Source: Auanema rhodensis (taxonomy: Eukaryota; Animalia; Nematoda). From it: a stretch of DNA of 64,000 nt. Made by a program: the position numbers and the translations under genes. The notes beneath the pieces are model-generated. The model made no database searches. It was not told the origin of the DNA and worked only from the letters and a program-made list of their open reading frames with translations. The stretch lies in contig OZ059897.1 of NCBI GenBank assembly GCA_964057225.1, forward strand, positions 9,610,001 to 9,674,000. Direction: 5' to 3'. Positions 961 through 30,941 of this stretch are shown one piece after another. The first letter of the stretch is position 1; the number at the start of each line of letters is the position of its first letter.

Positions 961-3900
961 TCTTTAATAGACCGATATGATCTTACAATCTTATCGTAGA
1001 TTAGGAAAATATGTTTTTTTCAAATAAAAGTTTTTAAAATCTACAGAAAACTACAAAAAAATTACATTGTTCTCTCTTATGACTTCCAGGAAGAAAACGT
1101 TCCTACAACGTCGAATAATCAGATGATTTGTCTTGTTAACTCATCGTTATAATTCAATGAACAAAAGGACAAGAACTTGAAATTTCAACAATAATCTTAG
1201 CTATCTGTATAAATATTTATTGAAATTAAACATACAAAATTATAATAAAAATAGTAAAAAAATTTATATAATTGTGAATAATTTTCAAATTTTTGATAAT
1301 TTTAATAGAATTTCCATTTTTTTCCCAAACTTTTAAGGAAAATGTTGGTCTTTCTCAAAATTTTCATCGTTATATATGCTTTGGAAAAGTTAATGAACTG
1401 ATATATGTATCACACACTTTATAGATGAATTTTATTATTTATTATTATTTATTTATTATTTTGATTTTCAATTTTTTTGTTAAAAAAATCTTAATTTGAT
1501 TCAATTTATGTAGTTTACCGTTGGATGGCCTTTACATGTCGACCCCCCCCCCTTCCCAAAGGTATACGGTAGAACTTTGTGTCGTCGTCAGTCTTTATAT
1601 GCTTATCGTCATTCTCTTCAGGCCAAGTTCTAATGAGAAAAGTTTGAGATGAAAAGCTGAAAATCTGATAAGAAACAGAACAACAGAAGAGAATATGTTT
1701 CGTGAAATTTTATTTAATTATAAATAAATTGATTTGTACATAATCTATATTTATGTCTTCATGGTCTGCATCTTCATTTCGCTACCATCCATAACAAGCA
1801 CGAATGACTTTGAACTTTTGTGATTAATATGATGATTAGACAAGCATCACGGAGTTAAGATATGCTTTTCTGATTTTTTGATTTTCACATTTGCAAATGT
1901 CCTATGTTCAAACTCTAGTTTATCATTAAAAAATTTGTTTGTTTCCCAATTTTTTAGTTTAACAAGATAATGTTTCTGTTCATACAATATGTATGTATCT
2001 GTCGGCTAATCCGACGTAGTCCGCTCAATTACAGTGTCCAACTCATCGAATGACGCAACCCATATATAGAGTATTACAGACTTGAAGAGGATAAGGCTAA
2101 GGGGATAAGAGACTTAGATTCTTGCTACTGATACTCATCCTCATTTGCTAGGACACACCAACTACTCCTCTTTAACAATCATTAGAATGAGATAATGACG
2201 TAACTATTACTCCTAGCACCTCTCTAACTTATAGTTGGGTGTCTCTCTTCATTCTCACTCTTTATTCATTTCTTAATAACGTTTGAAGAAACGGAGAGAG
2301 ATATACGGATATACAGAGAGATATGATGAGAGGAAGAGAGAGATAGATGAAGAAAGATAGGCAAAGAGGGGGAGAGTAGAAAAAGTTGTCAGTGAGGAGT
2401 GAAATACATAAGTAACTCTGAAAAGGTTAAGTGGTTATCTTCAAAGTACTTCTCAAAACTTTGATTATACCGAATACAATGATATTTGAGGTTACTGTAG
2501 TTTTGCTCTATTCTGTTCATTATCGTCACAGTTCTAACCAGGAAGTTGTTTCATCGTTTTTAGTAATTTAGAAGTCAAAACTATATAATTATTATGCATT
2601 GTTTATAGTTTAATGTAAAGTATTATATGATTTTTTCCACAAATAAATATTTCTCTTTGTCATTTCACTAATTAGATTATCATTTAGCATCCTGATTTGT
2701 CGTTACAATTGAAATAAGAACATGACATAAAGAGAAAATGTAGCATACATGACTCAAGTTTTTCTTTCTAATTTTAATGTTTATAAACAAGGTTGCAATA
2801 TGCTTCTTCTTATTATTAAAATTCTTGCTTATCATCATCGTTTTTCATAATCAAATTACCTGAATAGCTAAAGAGATACAAATCAACCGGTCATCTAATT
2901 GCTACAGTTAGAAATGATATTATTCCTAGATGGCACTTCACGTGCAATTGACGTGCATCAACTGAGCTCAACCAAGAAAAAGACATTTCAAAGGATTTTT
3001 TTCACTTGCTCATTAGTGATTGTCAGCTGCTGAACAAACAGTTGATATAATGATAAGGGCTTCTGATGTCTTAAGACCAGCTGCTTTGTGTATTTAACCG
3101 ATTGACCGGAATTCCTTCTTTCATCAAGACCGACCGTAACACACTGATAAAATGCAAGACGTGGACTCCAGAATAGGACATCAGTTGATTTGCCAAATTG
3201 ATTTCCAGATGGCTTCTGTATACAGTCGGTATGATGAAAACGGGCGCAAAATCAACTATCAGTTAATCGTTCATGTAAACAAAATTAATAAATGATTAAT
3301 GATATTCTTTAACAGTTACAATATAATAATAAAAATCAAGAAAAAAGAAACAAAACAAAAAAAAACTTTCAAGGTATATGCTGATATGTTTATGATCAAA
3401 GACTATATGACGGCATATAATTAGTATGTAAACCAACTTTAATATTCATAACAAACTAATTTTATTTTTATTTTTATTACCTATTAATGACAGAGAGTCT
3501 AAAGAAAATGTTCAATTGAAGTGCTCAATGCACATCTATATCTACGTATACCATCAGTTGTCATCCTCTTTTATCTCAACCGCCACCAGCTAGACCTTGT
3601 CAACAGAAATGTAGAAAGAACAGATAGTAAATCAATTTATTGTCAATCGTGTTATAATATAGAAGGAAAAAATTTAGAGATGAAGATGGCAACAGAGTTT
3701 TCCTTTTTTTCTTGTTTTCATACATTTTTTTTGCCAAAAATATAACATAAATATACATCAAATACATATAAAACATTACAGTATGATAGAAATAAACTGT
3801 GAAGCCCAAAAAATGATTTGGAAATATGAAATGCAACCGGAAAACAAATGGAAAGAAGCAAAGACTGAGAAAGAATAAGAAGCTCTAGAGGTTTTATTTT

Positions 3901-4411
3901 CTCTGTTTCAATAAAATTATTATTTTTTTTGGAAAGTAGATGAAGGTATTGTGTAAGATTTGCAATTGTTGGAAATATCATTGCATGTACCAGAATATTC
4001 GATGAATTTCACAAAACAAATGTAAGAAATGTGATAATGAAGATACAATTTGAACACATAGTATATAAGATATAAATATATTTATATAACATTCAAAGAT
4101 GAAAAAAAGTTTTTTTTAAATAATAATAAAAAAAGAAGAAGATCATTTGTAATACACGTGTTGTTTTTGGGTGGGAGGATGGAGTAGTGGAAAGTTTTTT
4201 CATGAAAAAAAGCTGACATGTTATATTTAAACAATAAAATATATTGCACTTCAGTTCACCAAAAAACTTGACACGATTCAGCGAACCTGGCCGATTCCTA
4301 CATTCAACTGGAGACGATAATCGTTTTAAGGGAAAAAATGAAAAAATCACGTGAACATAAGTTCCATGTTCTCATGGACCACTATTCCACATGATATTCT
4401 CAACGAAAGAG

Positions 4412-7071
4412 TTAAGCGATTTTCGGATCGGGAACGCTAACTGAGGTAGTATCAGGTAAATCGGATGTGGATAATGCTGCTGTCTGAGCACTTGGATGCT
4501 GCTGCATTCGAGCCATGGCAGCTAAGAATTCTTGTGGATCCATGGGATTGACCATTGGGAAGAAAAAGGGCAGATGACGTGGTCCTAGACCACCGATAGC
4601 CATGGCAGCCGCTGCAGCCGGTCCAGCAGCTGCTGGATTTAGCGGTGCCAGCGGAGGGGAAAGATTTGTTCCTATGTTAGACGGTACAACCGGAAGGATT
4701 GGGCGCATCATAGGCACACGTGGGCCAGAAGCTGCAGCTACCATTGCGGGCATTCCAGGAAGAAAGCTGCTGAACTGAAGTCCTTGTAAGTCAGAATTAT
4801 CAGGTTGACGCTTGAATCTGAAATAAATGAAAATAAATGAATGAAAATTGAATAAATATAGAAGAAGTGGGCAAAAATCAAATAAAATCGATAATAGAGA
4901 TAAGTTATTTTTCTTTGAAATAATTGTTTTCATATTATTATTATTACTATTGATTCGATTATAATTTAACTATACTAACCAAACAACTATTCTATCAATT
5001 CATAATATAATTTATGTGAGTATATTAGCTGAAAAAAGTAAATTCAACTGATCACTTCGCTACTTGGAATAAAATGTTTTTTGATTTTTCTTTTTAGAAG
5101 CTGCAAGTGTTAATGTATTTAACATTGCTTCGATATATTGGATATATGTATATATGTGTAAGCTTTATAAAAGAAGCAAAAAATGAGAAGATTTAAAAGA
5201 GAAAAGATGAAAAGATATTCGTAAAAAAATGAGAAAACATGAAAAATTACATATTTTTAGCACATATTGAAATGAATTAAGCAGATACAACATATGTCAT
5301 TTGATGAGTATACGAGGATCAGTATGTGAGTGTGTATGTGTATATCTGAGTGTATGTGATGTGTATATCTGTGTGTTGTCTATGTGGCTGTTGTTCAAGC
5401 AAGTTGGCATACGGTAGTCGAAATCAACAACCATTCACACCTTTAAGCCAAAGTCATAACTATTGAAGTTGGAAATAAATTTTCTTTTGAAATAAAATTA
5501 TAAAAGTGAATAGGATTATAAGATAATATACAAATACAGAATATATATATTTATATTTCTATATATGTATATGTATATGTATATATATTTTAAATACTGT
5601 CATCCAATGATGATGATTACGGTAGAATGTTCGAAAATTATCATCCATAGGATACAATTTTGCGATATGAATGATAAAAGGTCATTATAGATTATATTAG
5701 AAAAGACATTTTTATCATATAATCATATTATATATATATATAACTATAACTATATATATATATATATATATATATGACTTTTCTGTGAGATTTCAATGAT
5801 TTATGTAACGTTGATGCTCTCGAAATATGATGAAAGTTGTCATTCCTTTCATGAGCATAATAAAGAAAATATGAAGTAACAAGGAATAGTAACACGAAAT
5901 GAACAAACCGTTTGCGTCGACGTAGAAATGAACCGTTATCAAACATTCCTTCGGATTTGGGATCTAATCCCCAGTAATTACCCTTTCCAGGGTTTCCTGG
6001 CTCTCGTGGAATCTGGAAATAGTTACGATAAGAATCATTATTGAATATATATAGTAAGAAATGTTTACCTTCATGAAACAGTCATTCAAACTTAGATTAT
6101 GCCTGATGGAATTTTGCCATGCCGGAAATTTGTCACTGAAAATTAAATTCTAAGTATAGTAACTGTTTAAGATTCTCCCCTTAGAGAGAAAAAATTTAGA
6201 AAATTAATGAAAATCATGTATACTAATCATGTGAATTGATAGTTAAATGATTGATGATGATAGTTATGTTGATCAAAAAATTAAATTTACCGATAGTATG
6301 GGAAGCGGTTGATGATAAAATCACATATTTGGCTGAGTGTCAGTTTCTTTTCGGGTGAATTTAGAATAGCCATTGCTATTAAGGCTATATAACTATATGG
6401 TGGTTTCGATCCGTCAGACTTTGAACGATGCGATGACATTCCACCGGATTTTCTATCAGGTGTAACCGAATTTCCGTTTGACATTGATGTCATTTGACCG
6501 GTTGGATCAACTCCAGAAGCACTATTAGCTGGCGACGTTACTGTACATGGACTGTAAAATTATTGTGTAATAAAATATTTTATATTATTTCATTTTAAAA
6601 ATGCTTTAAAGTTCGGTTGGCGTAACTTTCACAATTAAGTTTTGTGGATAGAAAATAGTACCTGGGTGAATCATCATCTGATAAATCTCCACCATCCTTC
6701 TTGTCATCGTCTACTGCTGAGGAAGCTTCATGCAAATCCTCTTTGTAAACTACAGAATTCACAAAGGTAGCTGAATGCAGATCATCCTCTTCATCCAATT
6801 CGTCGTCAATTTCATCCAGTTCATCATCATCTTCCTCTTCATCATCTCTTTTCACATCTTCATTTGATGATGTGGATGGTTCTCGTGAGTAGCTAACTTC
6901 ACGTGAACTAGCGGAAAACGAATCCGAACCAAAATCTGCTCTAGCTACACGTTTATGAACAACTTCTTCTTCCTCATCATCAAGTTGAAGAGATAGATGT
7001 CGTTTTCTGGACTGTGAATCTTTTGAAGCTGATAGAATAGAATCCATTGAGAAACGAACTTGTGTCGTCAT
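4412..7071 (-). CDS. unc-130: Forkhead box D-class transcription factor, 5 coding exons (7071-6662, 6551-6291, 6135-6069, 6012-5909, 4817-4412)
   Basis: The spliced frame gives [99 protein letters not shown], a FoxD-type forkhead domain. There is an N-terminal eh1-like motif FSMDSIL, an acidic tract and a Pro/Ala-rich tail. All introns are GT-AG with matching phases, and TTTCTAG lies 2 nt before the ATG. Confidence 0.93.
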
Positions 7072-8230: not shown

Positions 8231-10806
8231 GGTCTTTTTTAACTTCAATTTGCAAAGCAAAGGAAAGCTAGATCGATTATTTAAACTTTTAAGAGAATAT
8301 GTAGAAAATTGTCTATTTATTATGTGAAAAATACATTGTCGATAAGTTATATTTTGAATATAATTTTTTTCTTATCGTATGTATTGAATTAAGATTTTCT
8401 GCTAAAATAATGAATCGTATTTTCAATTTTAATGTAATTTTGTAATGTACTGAACTAATTTGTGATTTGTTTTCTTATATAAGACGAATTGCTTCTTCTA
8501 TTTCGAAACAGTTTTCGTATAATCGACCTGAATGTCTTCTGATTGTCTTGTCGACATCGTAGTTATCGAAGTCAGCAATCGGTTGTCATCATGGTAAAAT
8601 CAACAAAAGCCGGTCACACTTCTCATAGAAACACAGTACTCCGGAAGAAATGAGGAAAAACCGAGGACGATTTTCACTCGTTGCCGATCACTTCTTGAGA
8701 CAACAAGAGTGATTTTTCTTTTATTCTCGTATAAACTTGATACGGCAACTTAAAGTTTATAATTAGGCTTAAGTATAACGTATTACAAATTAACTTTATA
8801 ATTTTATAATAAAAATGACCTCGGCTATTAGGTAATCTTGCTAAAAGATGATGACGTAAATGCATTCTGAATAGATTCATCGACGTCAGTATTGCTTAAC
8901 CATCTACGATCTAGTATATGATGTGTCTCTGATATCTGCTCTACACACTACGAGGTGAAGAAGAGGTGCTGATATGATATAAAGACAAGATGTCATCATC
9001 AAGAGACATTGTCATCTCATTTCTGAATACCCAAAATAGACGTACTATACTAAAGAAATAGAAATATTTCTGAATAATAATCGAATGTCATCCTTTTTTT
9101 TATATTTGTCACCTACTACGGTAGACGTTGGGAAAAGAAAAATTATTTTTAAATACAGCGAAAATACAAGTATGTTAGCAAAATAGAAATTAATAATGAA
9201 GGATGAATAAGCTGAATGAAATAATATATAGTATAACTGCATCAATGGCTATATCATTCTACAACAGGGCGAAAGTCAATGAGACAAGTGTGGAGAGGGC
9301 TGGAGAGGTAGAAATGTAAAATATCAGTTGGCTCAGGCAAAACATTTATCCAGGGGATCTAGTAAAACAATCACTTTTCATCAGCTTTCCCCCCATCTCT
9401 CGCTCAAAATTTTTTTTCAATTTCCGGATGACGTTAGGATATCTAACATGATGAGTACGAGATGTTGAAACTTCATTTCATTTTTTTTTGTTCATGAAAA
9501 CGTTGTTGGGTTTGTACTTTCTAATGAAAAGATAGAACGATACGATGAGAATCAGGTATGTTATCTCGAGAACACTCTTTTTTTTTTTTTTAAAAAACAG
9601 AATACATTATAACTATTTGATCTGTGAAATATAAAAAAACCGATGAACTACTGCACTTTCGAGTAAATCCACACGATGTGCTAGTTGATGAAACAGATTT
9701 GTCATAAAGATTAGAGACATTAAAGAAAAAGTACATGGCTAATAGTCTAGAAATTTTAAAATAAATGCCGCTTCTCACAATTCTAAATTATGAAACTTTC
9801 ACGCAAATATTATGTTAATTTCGTGTGATAACACGTTTACGTACACGTACATACACGTATACACATACAGCAAATTTCATTTTAAATGTTTGTTTGAAAG
9901 TGAAACGGTTGAGATTTTAAAAAACAATAAAATTATTCTTTTAGTCTTATAAACATGACTAACTAATTAAAATTTAAAAAAAATAAATTTTTTTGTTAAT
10001 ATGATTAGTGATGGAACTGATTGTTAAGACGTATTGTTTACTGTGGTTGAATGTCATCTAGCGCACTGATCAACGTAATTGGCAACATGGCTGATTGATT
10101 CTGATAATCAGATCAGACCGTACGAAGCAATTCAGACACATATAGAGGAGGTCTGACCGCTAGTTGAAGCAAATGATTCGATGAATAGACTGAAAAAGAA
10201 GAGAAAAACGATGATATGTGATGTGACAGACAGCCAGTTTTCTTCTGAGTCTTGTCATTCAGGACTCAGAGTTTTCAATTGTTTTATTACAATACATGAA
10301 AAAAAGAAATTTTCATAATTTTGTTATATAATTCGAATAAATATAATAATTTTGCAACCTTTCTTCCTGGTTTTAATTTATTTTTGTTGATTTAACATGA
10401 AAAAAAGAAGATTGTTTGCATAAAGCATTAAGATGAAAAGAAAATATTTTAAAAAGTATAACACTGATTGGTAACAGATTGTGTGTTGAGGCAGAAAGAT
10501 TGGCAAAAGTTTTTTTTATTCTCCTAATTCATACAATCTATCTATTAGGTGATGATGATATTGTCATCGTGATATTGGCAACTGTTGCCAAAACAATCAG
10601 CTTATTGTAACATATGAATTGACGAGAATATCTAAAGATAGTTTAATGAAATAGTATAGATACCGAAGAGATTGATGATAAAGCTTAGACCAATGAATTC
10701 AATTGAGCTGGAGCAGCAATCAGAGATCTGACTCATTCATCATCTAATCACCGCGACACGACAAATCGGTCGAGCAAGGAGACCCCACCCTATCTTTCAC
10801 TCACTC

Positions 10807-28017: not shown

Positions 28018-28269
28018 TTAATAAAATATAATATGCTTATTAAAGATTATATTAAAAATCTTTTTTCTCTTTCAAACTAAATTCAGAAGAGAAATGTATT
28101 ACATCAGGAATTATATAGATGAATGTTTTAACTAGAAAACTTTGAATGTTTAGAGCTTATTCTCATTATTTCATATCATTTTAAACTTTTTTTTCTGCAA
28201 TTTATTCATTTTATATGATAGGATATCTATTTACATTTTCATTTTTCATAATGTTTATTAATAAAACAT

Positions 28270-28886
28270 TTATTTACTTGAATGCCTTTTTTCAATATGT
28301 CCTGATAGAAACTCTTGAGTAAGAAAAAATTTGCTGCAAGCCCAACACTGAAATACAGATATACCGTTTTGATTGAATTCACTCATTTTAAACTCCATTT
28401 ACCTTATATAACTCCTGATTCTCATCTTTTTCCAATTTAGCCTTTAAACATCGAATTTCCTTTTTGCGTAAAGCTAGTTCTGTTTGCTTCGTTTCTAATT
28501 CTGCTACAAGTTGGCTTTGCGATTTCTGAAAGTTGGAAAGAAGTACATTTCTTAATTCGAATCAAGATATACCAAAGCATGTTCAATCTGCATCTGTGCT
28601 ATACGCAGTAGTTTCGGTAATTTCTCTTTCTGATCTGAGCTCAAGCTTAGGGGATCAACAGATAACAGGCTGGGCAACAGAGCTTGCAGAGTTTCGAATC
28701 GAGCAATCCCTTGCTCAAGAAGAGGCAAACTGACTTCATCTATAAAATACTTAGAATTATATTGATTACAATTAAATTAATTGTATAGTCAAAGCCATTT
28801 ATCTTTTGTATAAGCACTGTGTATAAGCACTAACCTATAAGCTCCCAGTTGGGCAATTTGAGCGTTATATTTTCAGAATTGTTCAT
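28270..28886 (-). CDS. DZIP1/Iguana-like protein: Dzip N-terminal domain, short coiled coil and one C2H2 finger; 4 exons (28886-28835, 28739-28573, 28525-28403, 28347-28270), 139 aa
   Basis: Spliced product: MNNSENITLKLPNWELID/EVSLPLLEQGIARFETLQALLPSLLSVDPLSLSSDQKEKLPKLLRIAQMQIEHAL/KSQSQLVAELETKQTELALRKKEIRCLKAKLEKDENQELYK/CWACSKFFLTQEFLSGHIEKRHSSK*. All introns are GT-AG, the total is 420 nt in frame, and AATAAA follows the stop. It matches the DZIP pattern W..I..(V/I) ... KL.R.AQ..IE..L.SQ ... C..C.K.F....FL..HI..RH. Confidence 0.82.
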
Positions 28887-29049
28887 ATAATTAGTGTTCA
28901 CAGTATACAACTATTCAAACAGCTAGTTATCCACTTACGAATACGATAATAGTAATAAAAATTGAAATTAATTGAAAAATTGAAATTAAATAAGAAATCT
29001 AAAATCGAGTATGTATGTTTAGATGTAATATCATATAATTGGTTCCCCG

Positions 29050-29063
29050 GTTGCCATGGCAAC
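29050..29063. promoter_or_regulatory. X-box (RFX/DAF-19 binding site)
   Basis: The perfect palindrome GTTGCCATGGCAAC lies 164 bp upstream of the DZIP1-like ATG, a typical sequence and position for nematode ciliary-gene X-boxes. Confidence 0.88.
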
Positions 29064-29336
29064 AAATCGTATGACATCTGGCATCTGTTCCTATAGCCAA
29101 ATACACAATATGTACAATCGAATACTTGTTTTTTCCAGAGATAGAAACATCTCAAATTCATTTTTTTAAACAAAAAGAAAGAAGAAGATATTGTTTTATC
29201 AAATAATTTATTATTATAGGTTGTGTGTATAGTAGATAGATAGATAATAATAACTTTTTTATATTTCTTTTGCATGACAACAAAGGTATGAGCTGAATAA
29301 TGAAACAACAACTTAGAAAAAAATACACAGATTCTC

Positions 29337-30941
29337 TTATATAAATCCAACTTTCTCCATATTCGTCTTGAAAACTGTTTCCACACATGACTCAATTACA
29401 CGATCAATGTTTTTTGTTTCGGTTGCATTTGTAAAATGACAGTAAACAGGACGATCTCTTTGAATATCAGAGCTTACCAACCTCGAGAATCTGTCTTGTA
29501 TGTACGAAGCACTTTGATCAAAGCCGTTAGTTCCTTAGAAAGCAAAGGTTAAATTTTTCAAATTTTCGAATTCATATTACCTTTGTAATCCTTAAAACAA
29601 ACAGAAATACTTGTTTTCTTTAATTTTTCTCGAAATATGTCAATTTTATTTAAAAACAGAATCATAGCAGTTTTTTTTCCAAAACACTTATTATTGAATA
29701 TGCGTTTGAATAATCTCATGCTGTACTTCAATCGATTCTAAAAAAAATAAACAAATTGCTTAATAGGGGAGAAGCAGTCAATCGGATTTACCATTTCGGA
29801 TGTTTTCTTGCCATTTGTAAGAACTTTCATGATTTCATCTCCATCATCTATTCTAAAATTATTATGTTTATTTATCAAATTTGGAATAGCAAACTTCATA
29901 TTATATGCTGAAATTTCTGCAATAAACAATATTCCGTTTACGTTATCGAAACAGTGGATCCATTTTCGTTGTTCACTTCTCTGGCCACCAACATCAACCA
30001 TTCTACAAATAGAAAAAAAAACATTATTTATGCATATTTCAAAGTATCAAGATTATATTCAATACCTTAGAATATACTGTTTAAACGGAAATTCTATCTC
30101 ATTAATTCCTGAAGTTGCAGCTCGTGCACGTAGTACATCTTGCTCATTAGCCCTATACTCAGGAGCACTAATTCTATCGATATCATCCAAAAAGCTAAAA
30201 AAACCGTATGAAATGAACAAATGAGCATTCATTCTTACTATAATGCTGAATCCAGCAAGTCTATTTCATCTTTGCGCTCAATTGTTTTCTGGATAAAATC
30301 AGAATGATAAATAGCTTGTATGCTCCTTGCTAATTCATATGAAATTTCAATTTCATTTTTTTGAACTTGTCGCTTGTAGGCTTTAAAGTACTCAACATGC
30401 TGCTGCAAATATCCAACCATGTTAAATATACTCTCAAAATTTCTTTAATTTACTCTGATGCTTAGATCTTCATCCATCTCAATATCACATTTTTCAGCTC
30501 CACACAACAACTGCTCCAAAGACTCTACTGCATTGGCTTGTACCAGATACCGAAAATTTAAAAAATCCAAATCACTGAATCCATCTAAATGAAGAATTCT
30601 AGAAAAACAAATTTTGTTAGGTGTGGACATCCAATTTAAAAATGATATACCTCATTTGCTTAAAAATAGTACTTTTGCCAGATTCAGGTCCCCCTAAAAG
30701 AATTCAATTGCTTTTCTTTTTTTTTACTTTTTTTAACTACCTAGAAGTAAAATTTTATAAGTTCTGCGCATTCTAACTCGAGCTTGCTCAATCTCATTGT
30801 CAATTTCTATTGATTTCTGGACGAGCTTCCGAGGGTCAACATAGGAAGTGGATAAACTGAAATAATAAAAAAATTATAAAATAATAGGAAAAAATAAATT
30901 AATTAAGCTAACTTATTTGAAAATTGTCCAGTGAAATGCAT
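29337..30941 (-). CDS. gpa-11: Heterotrimeric G-protein alpha subunit, nematode-specific GPA-11 type; true start uncertain
   Basis: [82 protein letters not shown] and C-terminus MEKVGFI*. The GGPE P-loop, GFSDLD and EKVGF features match C. elegans GPA-11 as I recall it. 30941 is the first in-frame ATG found. Confidence 0.87.

What the first reader, a model, noticed from the sequence alone, without database searches (positions are those of the whole stretch)
28270..29063. Hidden miniature DZIP1/Iguana-like ciliary gene with a perfect X-box
Seen: four short exons missed by the ORF track splice to a 139-aa protein that ends three residues after its single C2H2 finger. A poly(A) signal follows, and the convergent gene's stop is only ~250 bp away. 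GTTGCCATGGCAAC lies 164 bp upstream. Established: DZIP1/Iguana proteins are basal-body/transition-zone factors of several hundred residues whose long C-terminal coiled-coil region works with the Chibby-FAM92 module, and X-boxes mark RFX/DAF-19 ciliary targets. Inference: this nematode keeps a stripped-down DZIP1 lacking the whole C-terminal region. That would suggest a Chibby/FAM92-independent role for the N-domain in sensory cilia. I cannot tell from here whether an orthologue is already annotated in C. elegans.
Basis: partly seen in the sequence, partly recalled or inferred. Interest (0 to 1): 0.85.

Follow-up and report, generated by a model that had tools for sequence, protein, structure and literature searches.

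The report
Orthologue of worm ciliary-base protein DZIP-1

Summary
A minus-strand gene of four exons (28886-28270) splices through three GT..AG introns into a 139-aa protein. It ends three residues after its single C2H2 finger. Spliced RNA contigs from four public runs show all three introns removed. A perfect X-box, GTTGCCATGGCAAC (29050-29063), lies 164 bp upstream of the ATG and about 53 bp beyond the farthest RNA contig end.

The protein is the orthologue of C. elegans C01G5.7/DZIP-1 (156 aa). Chen et al. 2024 (PMC11200010) identified it as the sole worm homologue of DZIP1L. They showed it is a transition-fibre protein that acts with ANKR-26 in ciliary gating.

Proteins of 134-205 aa with the same layout occur across nematode clades III, IV and V. 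Several are annotated as Dzip1 or Dzip-like_N. None of the 49 with an intact finger has the long C-terminal region. The nearest relative (Auanema sp. JU1783, 53% identity) ends one residue after the finger and has the same G-alpha gene upstream.

One small addition: the promoter-proximal X-box is conserved in seven other genera. I could not find it at C. elegans or C. briggsae dzip-1, nor in two filarial species.

The 3' end is not covered by RNA. The spliced protein was not run directly against Pfam.

The parts
29050..29063 (.). Perfect palindromic X-box GTTGCCATGGCAAC, the putative RFX/DAF-19 site. It lies 164 bp upstream of the ATG and about 53 bp upstream of the farthest RNA contig end.
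   Evidence: unique in the window, 0.03 expected by chance with up to 2 mismatches; an X-box sits at the equivalent place in seven orthologous loci.
28887..28997 (-). 5' UTR, minimum extent. RNA contigs run unspliced from exon 1 up to 28977 (X3) and 28997 (X4).
   Evidence: records 9 and 14.
28835..28886 (-). Coding exon 1 (ATG at 28886; 17 codons plus 1 nt). It carries the conserved LPNWxLID motif.
   Evidence: The exon 1 to exon 2 junction is shown by contig loose ends.
28573..28739 (-). Coding exon 2, the core of the Dzip-like N-domain. It includes the KLLRIAQMQIEH motif with the A-Q pair.
   Evidence: RNA contig X4 record 13.
28403..28525 (-). Coding exon 3, the continuation of the long helix (coiled-coil-like).
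   Evidence: RNA contig X4 record 13. The model of the Auanema orthologue has one helix over residues 61-116.
28270..28347 (-). Coding exon 4: the single C2H2 finger (CWAC...HIEKRH), a 3-residue tail and TAA at 28272-28270.
   Evidence: Bin depths show the first 42 nt in spliced RNA. Weak zf-C2H2 family hits for the exon alone.
28201..28274 (-). Three AATAAA poly(A) signals (28274-28269 overlapping the stop, 28259-28254, 28206-28201). The 3' end itself is not mapped.
   Evidence: One search also finds an AATAAA on the plus strand at 28260, which may serve the convergent gene.

Best explanation
This is the orthologue of C. elegans dzip-1 (C01G5.7), a complete and expressed gene for the miniature nematode form of DZIP1/DZIP1L. 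The protein has a Dzip-like N-domain, one long helix and a single C2H2 finger. By homology with C. elegans DZIP-1, it should sit at the transition fibres at the base of sensory cilia. There it should act with ANKR-26 to recruit DYF-19/FBF1 and TALP-3, so that IFT particles and membrane receptors can pass the ciliary gate. Its localisation should depend on the conserved RIAQ(L/M)QIE segment. Transcription in ciliated neurons is probably driven by the RFX factor DAF-19 binding the X-box upstream. Shown here: gene structure, splicing, orthology and X-box conservation. Inferred: localisation, partners and RFX dependence.
For: Gene model and RNA. Exon 2 alone retrieves ten short nematode proteins from 1.8 billion representatives, and a profile retrieves 53, all nematode where a source name is given, including C. 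elegans NP_001293705.1/C01G5.7. The spliced protein matches Auanema sp. JU1783 at E 2e-41 (53% identity, end to end) and C. elegans DZIP-1 at E 3e-25 (43% over 137 columns); E-values are scaled to 5.8 billion sequences. In the gene tree the window protein is sister to Auanema (100/99) inside the clade V group (99/99), and the tree broadly follows nematode taxonomy. Pfam Dzip-like_N is above the gathering score for Heterorhabditis, Ditylenchus, Acanthocheilonema and Bursaphelenchus members, at 38-48 bits. An HMM built only from clade III/IV members scores the window protein at 127 bits and its N-domain alone at 90 bits, while 2000 shuffles reach at most 11. The A-Q pair, whose mutation abolishes transition-fibre localisation of C. 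elegans DZIP-1, is kept at residues 65-66. In all 49 family members with an intact finger, the tail after the finger is 1-55 residues. The G-alpha gene sits upstream on the same strand in both the window and Auanema. X-box conservation. Function in C. elegans: PMC11200010.
Against: The whole 139-aa protein could not be submitted to Pfam because it has no reference. The exons submitted separately gave no Dzip-like_N hit. The closest relatives score just below Pfam's cut-off of 27.9 bits: Auanema 24.2, C. elegans 21.9. The structural match to human, mouse and fly DZIP1 is collinear and ranks first, but it is weak (E 0.2, TM 0.38) and was made with the Auanema orthologue's model. No RNA covers the stop codon or the poly(A) site. 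C. elegans and C. briggsae dzip-1 show no canonical X-box within 3-4 kb, so RFX control is not proven for the family.
Confidence: 0.93

Rival explanations
1. The gene is longer than 139 aa. The GTAAAT at 28277 would act as a splice donor, and further exons would encode a C-terminal region as in DZIP1.
For: TCAA|GTAAAT is a plausible donor sequence, and RNA contigs stop at 28306, before the stop codon.
Against: Of 121 possible AG acceptors within 2.7 kb, the longest extension is 72 residues. It lies about 1.9 kb downstream, within the span of the convergent plus-strand gene. The short-intron options add 1-34 residues. The convergent gene's RNA reaches 28215. The nearest orthologue ends 1 residue after the finger, and no family member has more than 55.
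Confidence: 0.04
2. It is a decaying fragment or pseudogene of a full-length DZIP1, not a functional gene.
For: It is much shorter than the 737-867 aa DZIP1 and DZIP1L entries of human, mouse and fly.
Against: The open frame is intact and the splice sites are canonical. The RNA is spliced. It aligns end to end with orthologues in three nematode clades, and the invariant residues are kept. The gene tree broadly follows nematode taxonomy. The C. elegans orthologue of the same size is functional (PMC11200010).
Confidence: 0.02
3. It is an ordinary single-finger C2H2 DNA- or RNA-binding regulator, and the similarity to DZIP1 is a coiled-coil artefact.
For: PDB and several Pfam hits are to generic C2H2 fingers and coiled-coil families.
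Against: Conservation is highest in the N-terminal region before the main helix (LPNWxLID, PLLE, LQxxLPS, RIAQLQIE), not in a heptad pattern. Relatives exceed Pfam's curated cut-off for Dzip-like_N. C. elegans DZIP-1 localises to the ciliary base.
Confidence: 0.01

Closest known systems
C. elegans DZIP-1 (C01G5.7; NP_001293705.1; Chen et al. 2024, PMC11200010)
   Same: Same layout: N-domain with LPNW, PLLE and RIAQLQIEH motifs, a long helix, then one C2H2 finger. Identity is 43% over 137 aligned columns. The A-Q pair needed for transition-fibre localisation is kept. Both are single short proteins without the DZIP1 C-terminal region.
   Different: The window protein has 139 aa against 156, and a 3-residue tail after the finger against 10. 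It has a perfect X-box 164 bp upstream, whereas no canonical X-box was found within 4 kb upstream of, or inside, the C. elegans gene. The neighbouring genes differ: G-alpha upstream here, Glyco_transf_92 downstream in C. elegans.
Auanema sp. JU1783 unnamed protein (P0031, 146 aa)
   Same: It is the nearest relative found: 53% identity and sister in the tree at 100/99. It ends 1 residue after the finger. A G-alpha gene lies upstream on the same strand, and the X-box GTTACCATAGCAAC lies 83 bp upstream of the ATG.
   Different: It comes from a different, fairly distant species, and its N-terminus is 9 residues longer.
Vertebrate DZIP1/DZIP1L (Iguana) and Drosophila Dzip1 (CG13617)
   Same: They share the Dzip-like N-domain followed by a single C2H2 finger. 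The predicted structure of the Auanema orthologue aligns collinearly with human DZIP1 residues 68-221 and fly DZIP1L residues 27-168. They act at the ciliary base.
   Different: They have 737-867 residues. In Drosophila, Dzip1 forms a complex with Cby and Fam92. In nematodes the long C-terminal part is missing, and CBY and FAM92 are reported absent from C. elegans.

Membership tests
DZIP1/DZIP1L family (Pfam PF13815 Dzip-like_N plus C2H2) | Dzip-like_N domain detectable by profile | tested here: met
   The evidence is indirect. The spliced protein had no reference and was not sent to Pfam, and single exons gave no hit. Orthologues pass the gathering score at 38-48 bits. An HMM built from Pfam-positive clade III/IV members scores the window protein at 127 bits, against at most 11 for shuffles. 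The closest relatives alone are sub-threshold at 22-26 bits.
DZIP1/DZIP1L family (Pfam PF13815 Dzip-like_N plus C2H2) | Single C2H2 zinc finger following the N-domain and helix | tested here: met
   C-x2-C-x12-H-x4-H at residues 115-136. The Cys and His columns are invariant across 33 family members.
DZIP1/DZIP1L family (Pfam PF13815 Dzip-like_N plus C2H2) | Conserved Ala-Gln pair (human DZIP1L A90/Q91, the ARPKD residues) in the 28-residue core | tested here: met
   RIAQMQIEH with A65-Q66. The role of these residues is taken from PMC11200010. The human sequence itself was not aligned here.
DZIP1/DZIP1L family (Pfam PF13815 Dzip-like_N plus C2H2) | Long C-terminal coiled-coil region | tested here: not met
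   The protein ends 3 residues after the finger, and no coding continuation exists. C. elegans DZIP-1, an accepted member, lacks this region too, so it does not define the family in nematodes.
Nematode DZIP-1 (C01G5.7) orthologue group | Best matches, full-length alignment and tree position within the group | tested here: met
   Every retrieved homologue that carries a source name is a nematode protein (five carry none); lengths are 90-246 aa, 134-233 aa for those with an intact finger. The window protein nests in clade V beside Auanema.
Nematode DZIP-1 (C01G5.7) orthologue group | Localisation to transition fibres and genetic interaction with ankr-26 | not testable with these tools
   Known only for C. 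elegans.
X-box (RFX/DAF-19) ciliary target genes | Promoter-proximal 14-bp X-box matching the consensus | tested here: met
   A perfect palindrome at 29050-29063. X-boxes with up to 1 half-site mismatch lie within 150 bp of the start in Auanema, Steinernema, Ditylenchus, Gnathostoma and Haemonchus, and weaker ones in Ancylostoma and Bursaphelenchus. That is about 6 such hits in 2.4 kb of promoter, against about 8 in the other 95 kb scanned.
X-box (RFX/DAF-19) ciliary target genes | Expression in ciliated neurons that depends on DAF-19/RFX | not testable with these tools
   The RNA contigs show only that the gene is transcribed at low depth.

The most novel reading that the evidence does not exclude
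RFX/X-box control of dzip-1 is ancestral in chromadorean nematodes, since it is seen in clades III, IV and V. It has been lost or replaced by a non-canonical element in Caenorhabditis and in filariae. In addition, the window and Auanema proteins, which end 1-3 residues after the finger, define the minimal natural DZIP unit: N-domain, helix and finger. That would show everything after the finger to be dispensable for transition-fibre function.
Probability: 0.45. Interest if true: 0.25.

Novelty: already known. Interest (0 to 1): 0.15.

Why it matters
The finding adds one well-supported gene model, which is absent from the protein collections searched, to a family whose function was worked out in C. 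elegans in 2024. It shows that the short DZIP-1 form is shared by nematode clades III, IV and V and is not a peculiarity of C. elegans. It also corrects the older statement that nematodes lack DZIP1 (PMC6904220). The only new point is regulatory: a conserved promoter-proximal X-box in many genera, but none detectable at the Caenorhabditis genes. That is a modest lead for people who study how RFX target sets evolve.

Tried and rejected
- **Pfam on the three in-frame exons separately:** no Dzip-like_N hit, because the pieces are too short.
- **ESM Atlas with exon 2:** only chance bacterial clusters.
- **PDB sequence search with the family profile:** only generic C2H2 fingers. No DZIP1 structure turned up.
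- **Foldseek against Swiss-Prot models:** DZIP1 ranks first, but at E 0.2 and TM 0.38 this is weak support only.
- **Loose X-box consensus RTHNYYWTRRNRAC in the window:** 6 matches against 6.4 expected, so the other matches (for example 10584-10597) are not meaningful.
- **Earlier scan notes:** nothing relevant.
- **Literature search for DZIP1 together with X-box and daf-19:** no paper.
- **Whole 139-aa protein:** it has no reference, so it was not typed into any database tool. It was compared only inside scripts.
- **Chibby and FAM92 in this genome:** could not be searched, because only this 64-kb window is available.
- **Species of origin:** not identified. The run names are coded, and the nearest relative is only 53% identical.

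Full report
**1. What is in the sequence**

The gene lies on the minus strand. Its exons are 28886-28835, 28739-28573, 28525-28403 and 28347-28270. They are joined across GT..AG introns of 95, 47 and 55 nt. The result is a 420-nt open frame encoding 139 residues plus TAA.

The last exon holds a single C2H2 finger at residues 115-136, and only three residues follow it. AATAAA overlaps the stop codon and occurs twice more within 70 nt. GTTGCCATGGCAAC occupies 29063-29050, 164 bp upstream of the ATG. It is the only match in the 64-kb window even when two mismatches are allowed, where 0.03 matches are expected by chance.

The convergent plus-strand gene's ORF ends at 28021, 248 bp from this gene's stop.

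**2. Is it transcribed and spliced this way?**

Four small public runs of one study hold spliced contigs of the region.

- **Exon 1 to exon 2:** contigs in X3 and X4 run from 28835 to 28977 and 28997. Their loose ends, reverse-complemented, read as the first bases of exon 2.
- **Exon 2 to exon 3:** X4 record 13 (334 nt) joins 28573-28741 directly to 28403-28525.
- **Exon 3 to exon 4:** the remaining 42 nt of that record, together with the bin depths, fit exon 4 down to 28306, with intron 3 absent. The arithmetic is 96 covered nt in bin 28312-28462, 104 in 28463-28613 and 6 in 28161-28311.

So all three introns are removed in RNA, and the 5' UTR reaches at least 28997, about 53 bp from the X-box. 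The last 36 nt of the CDS and the 3' end are not covered.

The neighbouring genes are spliced in the same contigs, so these are RNA runs. The convergent gene's contig reaches 28215.

**3. Could the gene go on?**

I joined the possible donor at 28278|28277 to each of the 121 AG acceptors within 2.7 kb. The longest extension is 72 residues. It lies about 1.9 kb downstream, within the span of the convergent plus-strand gene. Introns of normal size for this genome add only 1-34 residues. There is no hidden C-terminal region.

**4. What family is it?**

Separate exons gave no Pfam hit. The spliced protein has no reference, so I did not type it into any database tool. I searched with exon 2 instead.

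- Among 1.84 billion representative proteins, exon 2 found ten short proteins at 46-62% identity. Those with a source name come from Heterorhabditis, Necator, Steinernema, Ditylenchus, Mesorhabditis and others.
- A profile of these retrieved 53 proteins of 90-246 aa from nematode clades III, IV and V (those with a source name). One of them is C. elegans NP_001293705.1, locus C01G5.7, 156 aa.
- Several are already annotated as 'zinc finger protein Dzip1', 'Cilium assembly protein DZIP1 N-terminal domain-containing protein' or 'Iguana/Dzip1-like ... family protein'.

Inside scripts, the spliced window protein matches:

| Relative | E-value | Identity |
|---|---|---|
| Auanema sp. JU1783 | 2e-41 | 53%, end to end |
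| C. elegans C01G5.7 | 3e-25 | 43% over 137 columns |

These E-values are scaled to 5.8 billion sequences.

Pfam Dzip-like_N is above its curated cut-off (27.9 bits) for the Heterorhabditis, Ditylenchus, Acanthocheilonema and Bursaphelenchus proteins, at 38-48 bits. It is just below the cut-off for Auanema (24.2), C. remanei (25.5) and C. elegans (21.9). This may be why the C. elegans protein carries only the name 'C2H2-type domain-containing protein'.

An HMM built only from clade III/IV members scores the window protein at 127 bits and its N-domain alone at 90 bits. 2000 shuffles reach at most 11 bits.

An AlphaFold model of the Auanema orthologue (pLDDT 79) shows short N-terminal helices, one helix over residues 61-116, and the finger. 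Its best Swiss-Prot structural match is human DZIP1 residues 68-221, with fly DZIP1L and mouse DZIP1 also listed. The scores are weak, at E 0.2 and TM 0.38.

The gene tree puts the window protein beside Auanema (100/99) within the clade V group (99/99). It broadly follows nematode taxonomy, as expected for a vertically inherited gene.

**5. Is the short form real for the family?**

Among 49 family members with an intact finger, the tail after the last histidine is 1-55 residues. It is 1 residue in Auanema, 4 in Trichostrongylus and Gnathostoma, and 10 in Caenorhabditis. Clade IV proteins have 25-55 residues, several ending in an S-V-W-like motif. None has a long coiled-coil C-terminus. The window's three-residue tail sits at the short end of this range and matches its nearest relative.

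**6. What is already known**

Lapart et al. 2019 state that DZIP1, FAM92 and CBY1 are absent from the C. elegans genome (PMC6904220).

Chen et al. 2024 (PMC11200010) overturned this for DZIP1:

- Using the DZIP-like domain and the finger in BLAST, they identified C01G5.7 as the sole homologue of DZIP1L and named it dzip-1.
- They noted that it is far shorter than human DZIP1L (156 against 756 aa).
- It localises to the transition fibres, below the transition zone.
- The N-terminal parts of human DZIP1 and DZIP1L localise to the worm ciliary base.
- Mutating the conserved Ala-Gln pair, the ARPKD positions, abolishes localisation.

The window protein keeps that Ala-Gln pair within RIAQMQIEH.

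**7. The X-box**

I fetched eleven orthologous loci and scanned them together with the window.

| Species | X-box | Position |
|---|---|---|
| Auanema | GTTACCATAGCAAC | 83 bp upstream of ATG |
| Steinernema hermaphroditum | GTTGCTGTGGCAAC | 47 bp upstream |
| Gnathostoma spinigerum | GTTACCATGGCTAC | 69 bp upstream |
| Ditylenchus destructor | GTTGCCATTGGAAAC (perfect half-sites, 3-nt spacer) | 147 bp upstream |
| Ancylostoma ceylanicum | ATCGCCATGGCAAC | 66 bp upstream |
| Bursaphelenchus xylophilus | GTAACCATAGAGAC | 44 bp upstream |
| Haemonchus contortus | GTCTCCATGGCAAC | 4 nt after the annotated ATG |

The Haemonchus protein is predicted with an N-terminus about 30 residues longer than its relatives. 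Its start codon is therefore probably called too far upstream.

About six hits with up to one half-site mismatch fall in the 2.4 kb of promoter-proximal sequence. About eight fall in the remaining 95 kb.

No comparable motif was found in the 9.3-kb C. elegans locus or the 7-kb C. briggsae locus. The two filarial loci have only weak candidates. The 2024 paper does not mention X-box or daf-19.

So RFX control is well supported by conservation for this gene and most of the family. The Caenorhabditis genes must be driven differently or by a degenerate site. This is inference; no expression test was possible.

**8. Surroundings**

Upstream on the same strand is a G-alpha gene. Pfam G-alpha scores 56.8 bits for the ORF at 29738-30001. 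Its last coding ORF ends at 29337, and spliced RNA is present. Auanema has the same order, G-alpha followed by dzip-1, on one strand. C. elegans does not.

The gap of about 300 bp between the G-alpha RNA (to 29299) and the dzip-1 RNA (from 28997) contains the X-box. This argues for a separate promoter and against an operon.

**9. Verdict**

This is the orthologue of a characterised C. elegans gene, and a member of a family already annotated in many nematodes. The gene model itself did not appear in the protein collections searched, so it may be unannotated in this genome.

The remaining uncertainties are the exact 3' end, the direct Pfam score of this protein, and whether the X-box is functional.

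Noticed in passing
L001 (C. elegans, gene at 4001-5329) and L003 (C. briggsae, gene at 3001-3954): There is no canonical X-box anywhere in the 9.3-kb and 7-kb loci around Caenorhabditis dzip-1. Orthologues in seven other genera have one within 150 bp of the start. This suggests a regulatory change in Caenorhabditis. The filarial loci L005 and L010 also lack a good one.
   Followed up: partly
window 29299-30600, minus strand: A G-protein alpha-subunit gene with spliced RNA support ends about 450 bp upstream of the dzip-1 ATG. The order G-alpha then dzip-1 on one strand is shared with Auanema sp. JU1783 (L002, 1805-3619 and 4001-5217) but not with C. elegans.
   Followed up: partly
L011 (Haemonchus contortus) 3001-3018: The annotated ATG of the 179-aa H. 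contortus protein lies 4 nt before an X-box (GTCTCCATGGCAAC). The predicted protein has an N-terminus about 30 residues longer than its relatives. The start codon is probably called too far upstream.
   Followed up: no
P0010, P0044, P0028, P0030, P0057 (clade IV proteins): Clade IV DZIP-1 proteins carry a 25-55 residue tail after the finger. Several end in a short S-V-W-(K/R/T)-like motif. This motif is absent from the clade III and V proteins and from the window.
   Followed up: no
window 28021-28280: The 3' ends of the two convergent genes nearly or actually overlap. The plus-strand gene's RNA contig reaches 28215, and a plus-strand AATAAA lies at 28260, only 10 nt from the dzip-1 stop codon at 28270.
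   Followed up: no
PMC11200010 against P0026: The paper numbers the mutated C. elegans residues A67/Q68. The only A-Q pair in the 156-aa NP_001293705.1 sequence is at 71-72. This is a numbering discrepancy of four residues.
   Followed up: no
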